Both the position numbers and the translations under genes were made by a program. 49,513 nucleotides of DNA from Octopus bimaculoides (Eukaryota): assembly GCF_001194135.2 (NCBI RefSeq), contig NC_068990.1:19484912-19534424 (forward strand). Direction: 5' to 3'. Within the stretch, counting starts at the first letter, position 1, and the number at the start of each line of letters is the position of its first letter. Positions 8,211-48,842 of this stretch are shown here, one piece after another. Under the pieces are notes generated by a model. It had not been told where the DNA came from. It was given only the letters and a program-made list of their open reading frames with translations, and searched no databases.

Positions 8211-9389
8211 AAAACCAAAACAGCCAACAATTTGTTTCGACTTATATTATTTGATTTCTAAACTGAANNNNNNNNNNNNNNNNNNNNNNNNNNNNNNNNN
8301 NNNNNNNNNNNNNNNNNNNNNNNNNNNNNNNNNNNNNNNNNNNNNNNNNNNNNNNNNNNNNNNNNNNNNNNNNNNNNNNNNNNNNNNNNNNNNNNNNNNN
8401 NNNNNNNNNNNNNNNNNNNNNNNNNNNNNNNNNNNNNNNNNNNNNNNNNNNNNNNNNNNNNNNNNNNNNNNNNNNNNNNNNNNNNNNNNNNNNNNNNNNN
8501 NNNNNNNNNNNNNNNNNNNNNNNNNNNNNNNNNNNNNNNNNNNNNNNNNNNNNNNNNNNNNNNNNNNNNNNNNNNNNNNNNNNNNNNNNNNNNNNNNNNN
8601 NNNNNNNNNNNNNNNNNNNNNNNNNNNNNNNNNNNNNNNNNNNNNNNNNNNNNNNNNNNNNNNNNNNNNNNNNNNNNNNNNNNNNNNNNNNNNNNNNNNN
8701 NNNNNNNNNNNNNNNNNNNNNNNNNNNNNNNNNNNNNNNNNNNNNNNNNNNNNNNNNNNNNNNNNNNNNNNNNNNNNNNNNNNNNNNNNNNNNNNNNNNN
8801 NNNNNNNNNNNNNNNNNNNNNNNNNNNNNNNNNNNNNNNNNNNNNNNNNNNNNNNNNNNNNNNNNNNNNNNNNNNNNNNNNNNNNNNNNNNNNNNNNNNN
8901 NNNNNNNNNNNNNNNNNNNNNNNNNNNNNNNNNNNNNNNNNNNNNNNNNNNNNNNNNNNNNNNNNNNNNNNNNNNNNNTATATATATATATATATTAGAA
9001 GGTTTGGAAGTGATGTACAGGAAGTGATGTAGAAAAAATAATAAGATGACTTCAAATGCAACAGAATCTGATGAAGGCTTAACTGGAAAAAACTCCGAGG
9101 TCACTATCAATAATGTTCTTGCTAAACTATATATATATAGATAGATATCTGTGTGTGTGTGTATGCATATATTGTGTATATATGTATGTCCGTCTACATA
9201 AAATGATAACACTTGCACATGAGGTTAAGTAAACATATATACAGAATAAATAGTGACATGTGTTAAAAATTTGGATACTGAAGAATATGGTAGAATTCAT
9301 AAAAAGAAAACATGATGCTCTTCTTTCAATTCGTATTTTTCATATTTTAAGAGAAAAAAAATCTGTGCGTTTCTGTATTTTTGTGTTCA

Positions 9390-13287: not shown

Positions 13288-13660
13288 TTTCATCTTTTAT
13301 CTCTTACCTGTTTCATTCACTAGACTGCGGCCAAGCTCGGGCACCGCCTTGAATCTCTGAGTCGAATGAATCGACCCCAGTAATTACTTTTAGGCATGGT
13401 ACTTATTCTATCGGTCTACTTTGCCGAACCTTTATAGGGACGTAAACAAACTAACACCGGCTGTCAAGCGGTGAATTGGGGAAACAAGCTCAGACACACA
13501 TACGACAGACTTCTTTCAGTTTCTGTCTACTAAATCCATTCAAAAGGCTTTGGGCGGCCCGAGGCTATAGTAGAACACACTTGCCCAAGGTGCCACGCAT
13601 TGGAACTGAATCCCGAACCATGTGTTTGGGAAGCAAGTTTCTTACCACACAGCCACGCCT
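13288..13660 (-). mobile_element. SINE family A, full length
   Basis: Matches the reverse complement of 7809-8210 (cacttgcccaaggtgccacgc, ttcttaccacacagccacgcc). Confidence 0.9.
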
Positions 13661-30374: not shown

Positions 30375-30740
30375 GTATGGTTGTGTGGTAAGAAGCTTGC
30401 TTTCCAACCATATGGTTCCAAGTTCAGTCCCACTACGTGGTACCTTGGGCAAGTTTCTACTACTGTAGTCTCGGGCCGACCAAAGCTTCGTGTTTGAATT
30501 TCGTAGATGGAAACTGAAAGAAGCCCGTCGTATATATGTATATCTATATATTTGTATGTCTGTATTTGTCCCCTCACCATCGTTTGACAACCGATGTTGG
30601 TATGTTTACGTCCCCGTAACCTGGCAGTTCGGTAGAAGAGACTGATAGAATAAGTACTAGGCTTACAAAGAATAAGTCTTGGGGTCGATCTGTTCGACTA
30701 AAGGCGGTGCTCCAGCATGACTGAAAGAAGTAAAGGATTA
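30375..30740 (+). mobile_element. SINE family A, full length
   Basis: Collinear with 7809-8210, with a small deletion near the 3' end. Confidence 0.9.
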
Positions 30741-35730: not shown

Positions 35731-36570
35731 CGAATTTGTGAATTAATAAGAGGGTACTTCAGCAAGATGAATGTTTTGCACCACGTGCCAGATGAAACGC
35801 AACATATATTTTAGTATGGTGGCTTATGAAGTCTTAGTATATTAAGTGACACTTTTTACGTAATTTCACCATACTTTCTCAGTGAACAAAATCTTTGGGC
35901 CTATGTAGTTGCAGTACTTTACAGGTGAACGAAAGACAACATGGTATCACTGACACACCTTTGATCACATATTCTCTCGATCAGCTATGATCTGGATGCA
36001 AAGAATAACACTATTGATAAGAGTAATTTATTAAAATTAATAAAAGTAGCATATCTATAAAATGTGGTTTGATTCATCGTCATCAAATTATTGAAATCAA
36101 TCCGAATTTTCAGAATACAACCCACAAAGAGATTTCTGCTTAGACTGTAATGGTTTTGTCTCTGAAATTTGTTTGAAATGTTATTAAACATATATGAGAC
36201 TTTTTAAATATTGGCCCCAAAATGATATGCTGTTTTGACAAGGTTTCTCTCCTCTCTATAGAAACAAAATTAAATGATTAAAATACGTGTTACTCTGATA
36301 TTTGTATTAATTTCGTTTCACATTTGCAAATTAAAAAAATGATAAAGTGACATTGATAGAATACAAAACCAGAGTAAAGAGAAAAATTTATATATTTTAC
36401 GTTAACGCAACACTTAAACATATTTTTGTTTCACTTTGCTTTAAAGCCTGCTTGTTATTCTATATAATATTTCTAATGTAACCATATCGATTTGATAGTC
36501 AACATATAAACTAAATCAATTTTGATATTTTATACACACGATTTCATTATTATTATTTTCATTGTTGCAG

Positions 36571-36699
36571 GTTCGTGTCCAGATAGTGGTGCAATTTGCC
36601 AAAGTCGGTGAGATAGACACCCTTAAGGAACAATACTCGGCTGATGTTATTGTCAAAGGAAAATGGCGGGAACCGGCTCTTGATGGTCAGACACACACA
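36571..36699 (+). CDS. Internal exon of a pentameric ligand-gated ion channel subunit (extracellular domain beta1, beta1-beta2 loop, beta2/loop D), GEIDT-type Cys-less/Pro-loop-like
   Basis: Acceptor ttttcattgttgcag|GTT and donor ACA|gtaagt give a 129-nt phase 0/0 exon with no stops: VRVQIVVQFAKVGEIDTLKEQYSADVIVKGKWREPALDGQTHT. It aligns without gaps to glycine receptor alpha1 as I recall it ([26 protein letters not shown] versus VGEIDTLKEQYSADVIVKGKWREPAL), conserving G-x-I, Y, W-x-[DE]-P-x-L. The subfamily call rests on recognising the GEIDT and WREP motifs. Confidence 0.85.
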
Positions 36700-36790
36700 G
36701 TAAGTTGTTTACATTTATAAAATACATTTGAAGAATAAAGAAAAATAGTGATATAATAAAGGCATGACATATATTTTTAAAATACTCATA

Positions 36791-36901
36791 CGTGACACCT
36801 TGGGCAAGTGTTTTCTACTATAGCCTCGGGCCGACCAAAGCCTTGTAAGTGGATTTGGTAGACAGAAACTGAAAGAACCCCATCGTATAGTCGTATATAT
36901 G

Positions 36902-36967
<66 letters not shown>

Positions 36968-36982
36968 NNNNNNNNNNATATG

Positions 36983-41791: not shown

Positions 41792-42195
41792 ATGGGCTTC
41801 TCTCAGTTTCCGTCTACCAAATCCACTCACAACGCTTTGGTCAGCCAGAGGCTATAGTAGAAGACACATGCCCAAGATGCCACGCAGTGGGACTGATTTT
41901 GGTACCATGTGGTTCGTAAGGAAGTTACTTACCACACAGCCACTCCTGCACCTATATATATATATATAATGTGTGTGCGTGTGTGCGTGCGTGTGTATGT
42001 GTGTCTTTGTGTTTGTCTCCTACAACCCTTTAGCAACTGATATTTGCTTACATTCCCGTACGAATGCGGCTCGGCACAAGAGACCGATTTAATATGTGCC
42101 CGGCTTTAAACAGATAATGACTAGGATCGTTTTGGTGCCCCAGTATGGCCACAATCCAGTGGCTGATACAACCAAACGAAAGATAAGAAGCAAAA
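41385..42195 (+). mobile_element. Old SINE family A copy split by an antisense family A insertion
   Basis: Decayed sense head at about 41385-41545 and decayed sense tail at about 41980-42195 flank a better-preserved antisense copy. Confidence 0.7.
41582..41952 (-). mobile_element. SINE family A, antisense, nested
   Basis: Tail reverse complement (aaatcgaccccaggactta), (TA)n, then head reverse complement (cttaccacacagccactcctgca). Confidence 0.9.
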
Positions 42196-42741: not shown

Positions 42742-43285
42742 TTTACCTTTTATTTTTTACTTGTTTCACTCATTAGACTACGGCCATGCTGGGGTACCAC
42801 CTTCAAGAATTTTTTGTCGAAAGAATCGTCCTCAATACATTTTTGTTAGCCTCGGGCTTTTTCTATCAGTCCTCTGTTTGCCAAACCGTTAAGTTTCGGG
42901 GGCACAAACAAACCACAAGCAGCTGTCAAGCGTTGATAGGGACAAAGACACACGCATACATACATTCATATATATATATATANNNNNNNNNNNNNNNNNN
43001 NNNNNNNNNNNNNNNNNNNNNNNNNNNNNNNNNNNNNNNNNNNNNNNNNNNNNNNNNNNNNNNNNNNNNNNNNNNNNNNNNNNNNNNNNNNNNNNNNNNN
43101 NNNNNNNNNNNNNNNNNNNNNNNNNNNNNNNNNNNNNNNNNNNNNNNNNNNNNNNNNNNNNNNNNNNNNNNNNNNNNNNNNNNNNNNNNNNNNNNNNNNN
43201 NNNNNNNNNNNNNNNNNNNNNNNNNNNNNNNNNNNNNNNNNNCGTGGTAGGGAGGGAAGGAAGCTTCTTATCACACATGCACTTA
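42742..43285 (-). mobile_element. SINE family A interrupted by an assembly gap
   Basis: Tail reverse complement at 42742-42980, and head remnant aagcttcttatcacaca just after the gap. Confidence 0.7.
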
Positions 43286-45975: not shown

Positions 45976-47310
45976 AATCGTTCTATATTTACCCTAAGTC
46001 AGATATAGAACAACTTCACCTACCAAGAAAAGAGGATGGCCGTGAATTTTACAACTGGAATTAACAATGATGATTGTCGCTATTGGCCTAAACACTTACC
46101 TGAAAAACTCTCATGACTGGATGTTAAAACTTGTCTTAAAGCAGGAAACAGGAAAACATCATATTCAGTAGCAAAACAGGTAAAGAACTAAGTGAATTTC
46201 AAATACAACATATCCCAGAATTAGACGTACTGGAAGAAGCACAGAAAACACTATTAAAACCCGTGCTAAAATTGCTGCATTAAATATTCTTGGCAAGAAA
46301 AACCTCTCAGTGGCAAGTACGCAAAGGGAGCTGATAATACTGATGTTGGCGAAGCTCTTACCCATCAATCGTTAGTGTCTGCTGGCATAAAATCAGAGGC
46401 AGAAGAGTTTAACATAGCAGCCCAAAATCAATGCCTACCTACAAGAAGCTACCAGGCCAACATATTAAAGAACGGCAGTAGCCCAACATGTCGTCTATGT
46501 AAACAACAAAATGAAACCATCGACCATGCTGTGTCCGTGTGCAGTCCTCTTGCGCCTACAGAGTATCTCAAAAGGCATGATGGATCAACACAGTATATTC
46601 ACTGGATAATTTGCAAACACTTGGAACTGCCCCATGATAAAAACTTGGACCTGCCCCAGGATAAAACCTTGGACCTGCTCCATTGTTAAAACTTCGACCT
46701 GACCAATGATAAGCCCCTTCAGTGCTTGAAAATGACCACATTTGACTTTTCTTGAACTTCACCGTTCAAACTGACAGAAAGATAGATGCAAATATGCCAG
46801 ACATATTATTGAAGGACTTCGGACAAAAGATCCTGCCTTCCCATCGATATAAGTGTCCCGATCGACATAAATGTATCTGTCAAAACCTACCAAAAACTGA
46901 GCAAGTATAAAGATCTTGAAGTAGAAATCGGCAAAATGTGGAACCTAAAGTCTGAAACAACACCTGTTGTAATAGGTGCTCAAAGAATGATAACAAAAGG
47001 GGCTGATTGCTACCTAGTTTCGATACCGGGAAATCCCAAAATGGCAGAAATTCAAAAAGGAGTGCTCATGGGGACTTACCATATACTACCTAAAATAATG
47101 TCTTTGTAATCCCAAATTTCAAAAAAAAAAAAAAAATTATAAATTATTTATGTTTTCTTAAACGTTCTCTAGAAGAATACTTTATGCCAAACCAAATATA
47201 TGGCACCTTAGTCGTAACACCAAATTGAACGTCTAACGTGTTGTCTCTTGAGATCTCTGGGCGAGACTTCGAGCCAACATGTAAAAATATAAAGCAAAAG
47301 TGAAACATTT
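45976..47310 (+). mobile_element. 5'-truncated, decayed R4/Dong-clade (restriction-like endonuclease) non-LTR retrotransposon
   Basis: Broken frames read YPKSDIEQLHLPRKEDGR (post-RT motif), AAQNQCLPTRSY, a CCHC knuckle CRLCKQQNETIDHAVSVC (C-x2-C-x8-H-x4-C), RHD, then ANMPDILLKD...IDISVPID...KLSKYKDLEVEIGKMWNLK...PVVIGA (RLE domain). Stop at 47107-47109, then a 3' UTR ending in (AAT)n. Several stops and frameshifts. Confidence 0.9.
46621..46704 (+). repeat. 24-bp tandem repeat (3.5 copies) inside the R4/Dong relic
   Basis: ttggaactgccccatgataaaaac / ttggacctgccccaggataaaacc / ttggacctgctccattgttaaaac / ttcgacctgacc. Confidence 0.9.
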
Positions 47311-48595: not shown

Positions 48596-48842
48596 TTGTG
48601 TGTCTGNNNNNNNNNNNNNNNNNNNNNNNNNNNNNNNNNNNNNNNNNNNNNNNNNNNNNNNNNNNNNNNNNNNNNNNNNNNNNNNNNNNNNNNNNNNNNN
48701 NNNNNNNNNNNNNNNNNNNNNNNNNNNNNNNNNNNNNNNNNNNNNNNNNNNNNNNNNNNNNNNNNNNNNNNNNNNNNNNNNNNNNNNNNNNNNNNNNNNN
48801 NNNNNNNNNNNNNNNNNNNNNNNNNNNNNNNNNNNNNNNNNN

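What the first reader, a model, noticed from the sequence alone, without database searches (positions are those of the whole stretch)
36571..36699. Exon of a divergent GEIDT-type (Cys-less/Pro-loop-like) pentameric ion channel, missed by the ORF track
Seen: a clean 43-codon exon with pLGIC beta1-beta2 signatures. Known: Cys-less pLGICs occur in several invertebrate phyla including molluscs, and to my knowledge they are largely uncharacterised functionally. The motif differs from nicotinic-type subunits (such as DVDEKNQ), from which octopus chemotactile receptors derive. Inference: an orphan receptor from a separate lineage. The Cys-loop region is not in this window, so its absence is inferred only from the motif.
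Basis: partly seen in the sequence, partly recalled or inferred. Interest (0 to 1): 0.7.

Follow-up and report, generated by a model that had tools for sequence, protein, structure and literature searches.

The report
Exon of octopus Cys-less ion channel
The 129-base stretch is a real, strongly conserved coding exon of an octopus gene for an ELIC-like "Cys-less" pentameric ion-channel subunit; the gene is already annotated and its family already described, but nobody knows what the channel does.

Summary
Observation confirmed. Window 36571-36699 (+) is a 43-codon, phase-0/phase-0 exon. It follows a pyrimidine tract and ...ttgcAG, and is followed by GTAAGT.

[quoted passage not shown] The same 43 residues occur in O. 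sinensis, O. vulgaris and Argonauta hians.

Against a related species' contig, the exon differs at 24 of 129 bases. All 23 changed codons are synonymous, and the flanks do not align.

The full protein is a pLGIC subunit:
- It passes Pfam Neur_chan_LBD.
- The AlphaFold model matches GABA-A/GlyR structures (Foldseek E about 1e-20).
- Its best sequence match in the PDB is bacterial ELIC (1.3e-18), against 2e-11 for the best eukaryotic receptor.
- The two Cys-loop positions are Glu (85/85) and Leu (83/85). FPxD is kept.

It is not new: the oyster orthologue K1QX27 is in the alignment of Jaiteh et al. 2016, who described the Cys-less clade. Function is still unknown. No other exon of the gene lies in the window.

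Noticed in passing: nearly all family members lack a signal peptide and carry a conserved basic KKRR motif after M4. This suggests the "extracellular" domain may face the cytosol. That is untested.

The parts
36547..36570 (+). 3' end of the upstream intron: pyrimidine-rich tract (ttattattattttcattgttgc) and the AG acceptor at 36569-36570
   Evidence: Read directly. An AG sits at the same position in all 10 homologous loci.
36571..36699 (+). Coding exon, 129 nt, 43 codons, phase 0 at both ends. It encodes strand beta1 (VRVQIVVQFAKVGEID), the beta1-beta2 loop tip (TLKE), strand beta2 (QYSADVIVKGKWR) and the start of the next loop (EPALDGQTHT) of the ligand-binding domain. It equals residues 28-70 of P0046.
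   Evidence: Strand limits come from the AlphaFold model of P0046 (E28-43, E48-60). Family-invariant residues in the exon are K38, G40, T44 and W59.
36700..36705 (+). Splice donor GTAAGT, start of the downstream intron
   Evidence: Read directly. A GT sits at the same position in all 10 homologous loci. In P0046 residue T70 is followed by A71 of the next exon, which is not in the window.

Best explanation
The feature is an internal coding exon of the octopus orthologue of a strongly conserved lophotrochozoan gene. It is the second coding exon in RefSeq isoform X2. [quoted passage not shown]

The exon encodes beta1, the beta1-beta2 loop and beta2 of the ligand-binding beta-sandwich. In all pLGICs whose structures are known, the beta1-beta2 loop tip (here G-E-I-D-T-L-K-E) sits on the M2-M3 linker (here L-P-R-I-S-Y-L-T-Y-M-D), next to the Pro-loop (here F-M-E-N-L-E-L-N-D-F-P-F-D-V-Q-D-L). 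It passes agonist-induced movement of the binding domain to the pore helix M2. That this exon does the same job here is inferred from homology.

Shown here: the exon is real, is under strong purifying selection, and belongs to an annotated protein with a pLGIC fold, four helices, no Cys-loop cysteines, a 9-residue M3-M4 loop and a long tail after M4.

Inferred: pentameric assembly, ligand gating, and the coupling role of the loop.

Unknown: the agonist, and the ion selectivity. The pore entrance reads P-Q-N-R. The arginine at 0' is invariant, and there is no acidic residue at -1' or -2' in octopus, so neither the cationic 'GEK' nor the anionic 'PAR' signature applies.
For: Exon reality and selection:
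- Splice sites and reading frame.
- 23 synonymous and 0 non-synonymous codon changes against L007/L011, with unalignable introns.
- Same exon length and boundaries in 10 loci.
- HMM hit at E=1.4e-28 against 1.7 for the next best.

Identity:
- 43/43 identical to P0046 (O. bimaculoides), P0058 (O. sinensis), P0138 (O. vulgaris), P0045 (Argonauta hians) and two proteins from short (about 1.8 kb) Logan contigs, P0042 and P0043.

Family:
- Pfam Neur_chan_LBD scores 30.1 bits (cut-off 26) for P0046 and 44 bits for the protein assembled from locus L004.
- The AlphaFold model has pLDDT 83.7, with a beta-sandwich at 28-209 and helices at 212-234, 240-264, 273-298 and 302-382.
- Foldseek matches GABA-A, GlyR and RDL at E about 1e-20, with TM-score 0.70-0.75 on the target.
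- phmmer against the PDB gives ELIC 1.3e-18 and GABA-A gamma2 2e-11.

Cys-less status and pore residues:
- Glu 85/85 and Leu 83/85 at the two Cys positions. The Pro and Asp of FPxD are 85/85. R0' is 85/85, L9' is 85/85, and -2' is Gln in 74/85.

Gene structure in other species:
- Loci L002 and L004 carry exons B to E with the FPFD loop, pre-M1 RRPGY, M1-M2, and M3-M4 followed by a stop.

Literature:
- The Cys-less metazoan clade is described in PMC4795631, and K1QX27 (= P0041) is in its alignment.
- See also PMC9874803.
Against: - Only one exon of the gene is in the window. The link to the rest of the protein rests on identity to database proteins, not on contiguous sequence here.
- Pfam Neur_chan_memb is just below its cut-off for P0046 (27.2 against 28.1 bits). 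The transmembrane part is supported by the structure model and by ELIC alignment rather than by Pfam.
- No expression, assembly or current has been shown for any member, here or in the papers found.
Confidence: 0.96

Rival explanations
1. The exon is a relic of a dead gene copy (pseudogene or orphaned exon) and is no longer part of a working gene.
For: No other exon of the gene is found in 36.5 kb upstream or 12.8 kb downstream. The window is full of microsatellites, SINE-like copies and a LINE fragment.
Against: There are 23 synonymous and 0 non-synonymous codon changes against a related species, with intact AG/GT sites. The exon is identical to the corresponding segment of RefSeq models in four cephalopods and of two proteins from short (about 1.8 kb) Logan contigs. 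Intron A-B is already 2-7 kb in the other loci.
Confidence: 0.02
2. It is an exon of a conventional Cys-loop receptor (nicotinic, chemotactile-receptor, GABA or glycine type). The unusual GEIDT motif would then be only local divergence.
For: By fold, the nearest PDB entries are GABA-A, GlyR and RDL. Some relatives are machine-named 'GABAA receptor rho subunit' or 'GABA receptor gamma-3-like'.
Against: Both Cys-loop cysteines are absent in 85/85 relatives, including the octopus protein. In sequence, ELIC scores 70 bits against 46 for the best eukaryotic receptor, and no nAChR is in the top 60. The M3-M4 loop is 7-14 residues in most members, as in bacterial channels.
Confidence: 0.02
3. It is a chance open frame with chance splice-like flanks.
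For: Taken alone, the 43 residues reach only E=0.095 against Pfam, and give spurious weak PDB hits to steroid isomerase.
Against. There are 25 conserved copies in other genomes, HMM E=1.4e-28, and identity to annotated proteins.
Confidence: 0

Closest known systems
ELIC, the Erwinia (Dickeya) chrysanthemi ligand-gated ion channel (e.g. PDB 2VL0, 8D67)
   Same: ELIC is the best sequence match among solved structures (E=1.3e-18 over residues 28-311 of the octopus protein). It has no Cys-loop cysteines, and it keeps FPFD. Its beta1-beta2 region is very similar (ELIC ...[24 protein letters not shown]... against ...FAKVGEIDTLKEQYSADVIVKGKW...). So is M2 with the M2-M3 linker (RLQTSFTLMLTVVAY...LPRLPYTTYID against RLQLSFTLVLTAVAF...LPRISYLTYMD). 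The M3-M4 loop is very short in both. NCBI's product name for the octopus gene is taken from ELIC.
   Different: ELIC is bacterial and is exported with its binding domain in the periplasm. It has Glu in the pore-entrance motif (SER-L), where octopus has Gln-Asn (QNR-L). It ends a few residues after M4 (known from its structures). The animal proteins have a variable polar N-terminal extension, no signal peptide, a conserved KKRR...KD.EY motif after M4, and a tail of 20-140 residues. ELIC is opened by small primary amines such as GABA and cysteamine (established knowledge). The ligand here is unknown.
The 'Cys-less' eukaryotic/metazoan pLGIC clade of Jaiteh, Taly and Henin 2016 (PMC4795631), including oyster K1QX27
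   Same: The oyster orthologue (P0041 = K1QX27, about 77% identical to the bivalve-like L002 protein) is in their alignment. The defining trait is the same: both Cys-loop cysteines are absent and the loop proline is kept. The taxonomic bias towards Lophotrochozoa is also the same.
   Different: That paper names bivalves and gastropods among molluscs, not cephalopods. It also trimmed N- and C-termini from its alignment, so it says nothing about signal peptides or the tail after M4.
Schistosome 'Cys-less' LGICs (Smp_336620, Smp_334630, Smp_135040) and planarian gabrg1/gabrg2 (PMC9874803)
   Same: These are also Cys-less with FPxD kept, have no second Cys-loop, and are orphans. Flatworm relatives appear among the hits to the L002 query (Sparganum, Paragonimus, Macrostomum).
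   Different: The schistosome proteins all carry Glu at -2'. The octopus protein and 74/85 relatives have Gln there. Orthology to the octopus gene was not tested.
Octopus chemotactile receptors and nAChR-like subunits
   Same: They belong to the same superfamily and have the same overall fold.
   Different: Chemotactile receptors are reported to be intronless (PMC13174522). By established knowledge they are nicotinic-derived and keep the Cys-loop. This gene is split by introns at conserved positions, lacks the cysteines, and finds no nAChR among its best 60 PDB sequence matches.

Membership tests
pLGIC superfamily (Pro-loop receptors) | N-terminal ligand-binding beta-sandwich (Pfam Neur_chan_LBD) | tested here: met
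   P0046 scores 30.1 bits (cut-off 26). The protein assembled from L004 scores 44 bits. In the AlphaFold model, strands span residues 28-209. The exon alone is sub-threshold (12.5 bits).
pLGIC superfamily (Pro-loop receptors) | Conserved proline in the beta6-beta7 loop (F/Y-P-x-D) | tested here: met
   Pro and Asp are invariant in 85/85 relatives. Octopus reads FPFD. This loop is encoded outside the window.
pLGIC superfamily (Pro-loop receptors) | Four transmembrane helices M1-M4, with M2 lining the pore (9' Leu) | tested here: met
   The model has helices at 212-234, 240-264, 273-298 and 302-382. L9' is present in 85/85. Foldseek alignments of 312-343 columns to full-length GABA-A/GlyR chains give TM-score 0.70-0.75. 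Pfam Neur_chan_memb is marginal at 27.2 against 28.1 bits.
pLGIC superfamily (Pro-loop receptors) | Assembly as a pentamer and opening by a ligand | not testable with these tools
   This needs expression, biochemistry and electrophysiology.
Cys-loop receptors in the strict sense (animal nAChR/5-HT3/GABA-A/Gly type) | Two cysteines 13 residues apart flanking the beta6-beta7 loop | tested here: not met
   Glu (85/85) and Leu (83/85, Ile 2/85) occupy the two positions.
Cys-loop receptors in the strict sense (animal nAChR/5-HT3/GABA-A/Gly type) | N-terminal signal peptide and a long cytoplasmic M3-M4 loop | tested here: not met
   No hydrophobic run of 7 or more residues in the first 45 residues in 101/104 relatives. 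The M3-M4 loop is 9 residues in octopus and 7-14 in most members. The signal-peptide test is a simple hydropathy heuristic, not SignalP.
Cys-less eukaryotic clade (Jaiteh et al. 2016) | Eukaryotic pLGIC that lacks both loop cysteines and groups apart from the cationic and anionic Cys-loop clades | tested here: inconclusive
   Absence of the cysteines is met. The oyster orthologue K1QX27 is in their dataset. ELIC outscoring all eukaryotic receptors fits the grouping. I built no phylogeny with Cys-loop receptors, and I did not see which clade label K1QX27 carries in their tree.
Octopus chemotactile receptors (nAChR-derived) | Intronless gene, nicotinic-type sequence, Cys-loop present | tested here: not met
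   The exon is bounded by introns at positions conserved across phyla. There are no Cys-loop cysteines, and no nAChR is among the 60 best PDB matches.

The most novel reading that the evidence does not exclude
The whole clade to which this exon's gene belongs may sit in the membrane the other way round from every characterised pLGIC. The 'extracellular' ligand-binding domain, including the beta1-beta2 hairpin encoded here, and the long C-terminal helix would then be in the cytosol. The protein would be a channel gated from inside the cell, in the plasma membrane or in an organelle.

Grounds:
- 101 of 104 full-length-looking members have no signal-peptide-like segment. Rotifer members start 1-11 residues before beta1.
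- The N-terminal extensions are polar, rich in K/R/S, and swapped by alternative first exons.
- The flank before M1 is more basic than the flank after it.
- The binding domain has no disulfide and no conserved N-glycosylation sequon.
- The M3-M4 loop is short and poor in K/R.
- A conserved KKRR.M.QKD.EY motif follows M4 directly.

I found no paper that mentions this, but the library searched is incomplete.
Probability: 0.4. Interest if true: 0.85.

Novelty: already known. Interest (0 to 1): 0.33.

Why it matters
As it stands, the result is a correct re-discovery. The exon belongs to a gene that NCBI already annotates in several cephalopods, and to a clade described in 2016 that is now routinely used as the outgroup in octopus LGIC trees.

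Its value lies in the gene behind it:
- The bivalve-like L002 protein is 77% identical to the octopus protein, and 40-55% identical to annelid, nemertean, brachiopod, flatworm and rotifer members. That is unusually tight conservation for a receptor with no known ligand.
- The gene is absent from humans, mice, Drosophila and C. elegans (PMC9874803).
- In sequence it is nearer to bacterial ELIC than to any neurotransmitter receptor.

Finding its ligand would fill a hole in invertebrate signalling, and relatives in schistosomes have been proposed as drug targets.

If the topology reading in the section on the most novel reading is right, this would be the first pLGIC whose binding domain faces the cytoplasm. 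That would change where one looks for the ligand. It could also account for a lack of response when agonists are applied from outside.

Tried and rejected
- Pfam and PDB searches with the 43 residues alone. Pfam was sub-threshold (E=0.095). The PDB gave only chance hits to ketosteroid isomerase at E about 0.4-1.5. These were not used.
- The first homologue search with 43 residues returned only single-exon ORF fragments without names. Full-length named proteins appeared only after I assembled exons A-E from locus L002 and searched with that.
- Search for the rest of the gene in the window. I used tblastn with exon B peptides, HMMs of exons B-E on all six frames (best E 0.14-5), tblastn with six cephalopod proteins, and fuzzy peptide matching for the three alternative N-termini, the O. 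sinensis 14-residue cassette and exon B. Nothing was found. The window has 11 runs of N (2.8 kb in all), so a short exon hidden in a gap cannot be excluded.
- No conserved upstream (first) exon could be found by comparing loci L001-L006 with each other or with the window.
- The look-up of encoding contigs for P0046 found no record. I therefore could not measure the octopus intron lengths or confirm the species of the window by DNA identity.
- Searching the supplements of two papers for 'GEIDT' found nothing. The 2016 alignment file is printed with gap characters between residues. Searching by accession worked.
- My first signal-peptide measure, an 11-residue Kyte-Doolittle window, was too blunt.
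- The positive-inside argument was weighed, not taken at face value. Human GlyR alpha1 also has a few basic residues after M4 (from memory), so the tail motif alone would not be decisive.

Full report
**1. The observation**

Window 36571-36699 on the + strand reads ...tcattattattattttcattgttgcAG|GTTCGTGTCCAG...CAGACACACACA|GTAAGTtg. It has a pyrimidine tract, an AG acceptor, exactly 129 nt, and a consensus GTAAGT donor. It translates without a stop to VRVQIVVQFAKVGEIDTLKEQYSADVIVKGKWREPALDGQTHT.

Taken alone, the peptide is only weakly pLGIC-like. Pfam Neur_chan_LBD gives E=0.095, 12.5 bits against a cut-off of 26, matching profile positions 26-63. A PDB sequence search gives only chance hits. 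The motif reading was therefore a good guess, not something the 43 residues can prove.

**2. Is it more than chance?**

A search of 5.8 billion predicted proteins found 25 short ORF fragments, 64-97% identical, each running over one exon. None was named or full length.

I fetched the DNA around several of them. In ten loci the exon is exactly 129 nt, with AG and GT at the same positions.

Against L007/L011 (short contigs of a related species), the window differs at 24 of 129 bases in 23 codons, all synonymous. The sequence on both sides cannot be aligned.

An HMM built from six other-species copies, leaving out the window and its near-identical relatives, scores the window's frame at E=1.4e-28. 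The next best of all six frames is E=1.7.

This is a functional coding exon under strong purifying selection.

**3. What gene it belongs to**

Loci L002 and L004 have short introns. Reading them, I found the downstream exons:
- B: ...LWNPKLYIEN...GTFMENLELDDFPFDVQ
- C: DLTITVAS...RRPGYFVWNIFMIT
- D: FLICSLAFATF.VD...PENRLQL...SSLPRISYLTYM
- E: DKYLLISM..., then M4 and a stop codon

The L004 protein assembled from these exons passes Pfam Neur_chan_LBD (44 bits). Its best PDB match is ELIC (1.6e-20), followed by GLIC.

A search with the assembled L002 protein found 239 relatives. [quoted passage not shown] Two proteins from short (about 1.8 kb) Logan contigs, P0042 and P0043, share the octopus C-terminal motifs.

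Residues 28-70 of P0046 are identical to the window's exon. They are preceded by ...KGTL and followed by ALEG..., which fits the phase-0 boundaries.

**4. Nothing else of the gene is in the window**

The following all failed on both strands:
- tblastn with exon B peptides;
- HMMs of exons B-E;
- tblastn with six cephalopod proteins;
- fuzzy matching for the alternative first exons, for the O. sinensis 14-residue cassette and for exon B.

The window has 11 runs of N, totalling 2.8 kb. The rest is microsatellites, several copies of a SINE-like element and a LINE tail.

**5. What the protein is**

Evidence from fold and sequence for P0046:
- Pfam gives Neur_chan_LBD 30.1 bits (above the cut-off) and Neur_chan_memb 27.2 bits (just below 28.1).
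- An AlphaFold2 model built on 85 relatives has mean pLDDT 83.7 and pTM 0.75. It shows a beta-sandwich at 28-209 and helices at 212-234, 240-264, 273-298 and 302-382.
- In that model the exon covers beta1 (28-43), the loop tip (44-47) and beta2 (48-60).
- Foldseek against the PDB returns GABA-A, glycine and RDL receptor chains at E about 1e-20, with TM-score 0.70-0.75 on the target.
- By sequence, ELIC is best (1.3e-18, 70 bits). The best eukaryotic chain is GABA-A gamma2 (2e-11, 46 bits). No nicotinic receptor is among the 60 best.

Evidence from the alignment of 85 relatives:
- The first Cys-loop position is Glu in 85/85, and the second is Leu in 83/85.
- The Pro and Asp of FPxD are invariant.
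- R0' and L9' of M2 are invariant.
- The -2' position is Gln in 74/85 and Glu in 8/85.

The M3-M4 loop is 9 residues in octopus and 7-14 in most members. So the protein is a Cys-less, ELIC-like pLGIC subunit.

**6. How it most likely works**

In pLGICs of known structure, the beta1-beta2 loop tip rests on the M2-M3 linker beside the Pro-loop, and couples agonist binding to pore opening (established knowledge of the family).

All three elements are among the most conserved parts of this family. In the exon, K38, G40, T44 and W59 are invariant, and E41, I42, K46 and E47 are nearly so. The coupling role is therefore the best-supported function for this exon, but it is inferred.

The agonist and the ion selectivity are open. 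The pore entrance P-Q-N-R matches neither the cationic nor the anionic signature. The near-invariant SFVDEQEW hairpin before M1 suggests one conserved ligand across phyla, rather than a diversifying chemoreceptor.

**7. Comparison with what is known**

- Jaiteh et al. 2016 described Cys-less pLGICs in invertebrates, mostly Lophotrochozoa. They named bivalves and gastropods, and noted that their biology is undocumented. The oyster orthologue K1QX27 (= P0041) is in their alignment.
- Johnson et al. 2023 found the clade in schistosomes, and relatives in molluscs, annelids, echinoderms and chordates. Hits were often machine-annotated as glycine, GABA or cholinergic receptors.
- Two 2025-26 cephalopod preprints use 'the cys-less group' to root their LGIC trees, and one says its function is unknown.
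- A 2026 mollusc transcriptome survey counts 231 'Cys-less' sequences.

The finding is therefore already known in kind and already annotated as a gene. What remains open is its function.

**8. Something seen on the way**

The stretch before beta1 in 104 full-length-looking relatives is 0-190 residues long, polar and rich in K, R and S. In 101 of them there is no signal-peptide-like hydrophobic run in the first 45 residues. Rotifer members begin 1-11 residues before beta1.

Further points in the same direction:
- Directly after M4 comes a conserved basic motif (consensus P-C-K-K-R-R-x-M-x-Q-K-D-K/R-E-Y), followed by 20-140 more residues. In the octopus model these continue M4 as one long helix to residue 382.
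- The M3-M4 loop is short and poor in K/R.
- The flank before M1 (KCRAARRPG) is more basic than the flank after it.
- The binding domain has no conserved cysteine pair and no conserved N-glycosylation sequon. The mean is 0.26 sequons per domain, and no alignment column has one in more than 5 of 85 sequences.

By the positive-inside rule, and because a long N-terminal domain without a signal peptide normally stays in the cytosol, this predicts both termini and the binding domain in the cytosol.

Points against:
- Every characterised pLGIC has the opposite orientation.
- A few basic residues after M4 also occur in GlyR alpha1 (from memory).
- My signal-peptide test is a heuristic.

Jaiteh et al. 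trimmed the termini, and 'signal peptide' does not occur in their main text. Two literature searches found nothing on the point. I give this reading about 0.4. It is cheap to test.

**9. Verdict**

The novelty category is 'already known', and interest is modest at 0.33. The orphan status of a very conserved ELIC-like animal channel, and the possible inverted topology, are the parts worth a specialist's time.

Noticed in passing
Family level: P0026-P0145 (relatives of the gene that owns window 36571-36699). In P0046, residues 1-27 and 335-418.: 101 of 104 full-length-looking family members lack a signal-peptide-like segment. N-termini are polar and basic, and differ between isoforms. A conserved KKRR.M.QKD.EY motif and a long, helix-predicted tail follow M4. 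The M3-M4 loop is short. Together these predict a cytosolic ligand-binding domain.
   Followed up: partly
window 36780-36900 (core at 36824-36846 +); also 13542-13564 (-), 30469-30491 (+), 41829-41851 (-): A SINE-like repeat with the core CCTCGGGCCGACCAAAGCCTTGT occurs four times in the window, against 0 expected by chance. One copy lies 125 nt downstream of the exon and runs into a (TA)n/(TG)n microsatellite.
   Followed up: partly
window 46270-47106 (+): Two adjacent open frames look like the C-terminal end of a non-LTR retrotransposon ORF2. The first matches Pfam zf-RVT at E=3e-4, which is below the cut-off.
   Followed up: partly
L002 18331-18486 and 18820-18975: Two tandem 156-nt versions of the exon encoding the end of M1 and M2. 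Both have good splice sites and open frames, so they are probably mutually exclusive alternative exons that change pore-lining residues (FILLLTSVSF against FTLVLTAVAF).
   Followed up: no
L002 14102-14191: A decayed partial duplicate of the 3' half of exon B (the FPFD loop), 60 nt downstream of the real one, carrying an in-frame stop.
   Followed up: no
L004 8010-9160: A minisatellite whose unit derives from the 5' end of exon D (MFICGLAFATFSV...) fills the intron just upstream of that exon.
   Followed up: no
P0058 (O. sinensis isoform X2) residues 71-84: A 14-residue insert, LGGKTGEEHLCTRE, lies between this exon and the next. It is probably a cassette exon or a model artefact. It is not present in the window.
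   Followed up: partly
window, 11 runs of N (e.g. 444-1102, 8268-8978, 36968-36977, 42983-43242, 48607-48842): The window comes from a gapped draft assembly, with 2.8 kb of N in all. A short exon hidden in a gap cannot be excluded.
   Followed up: yes
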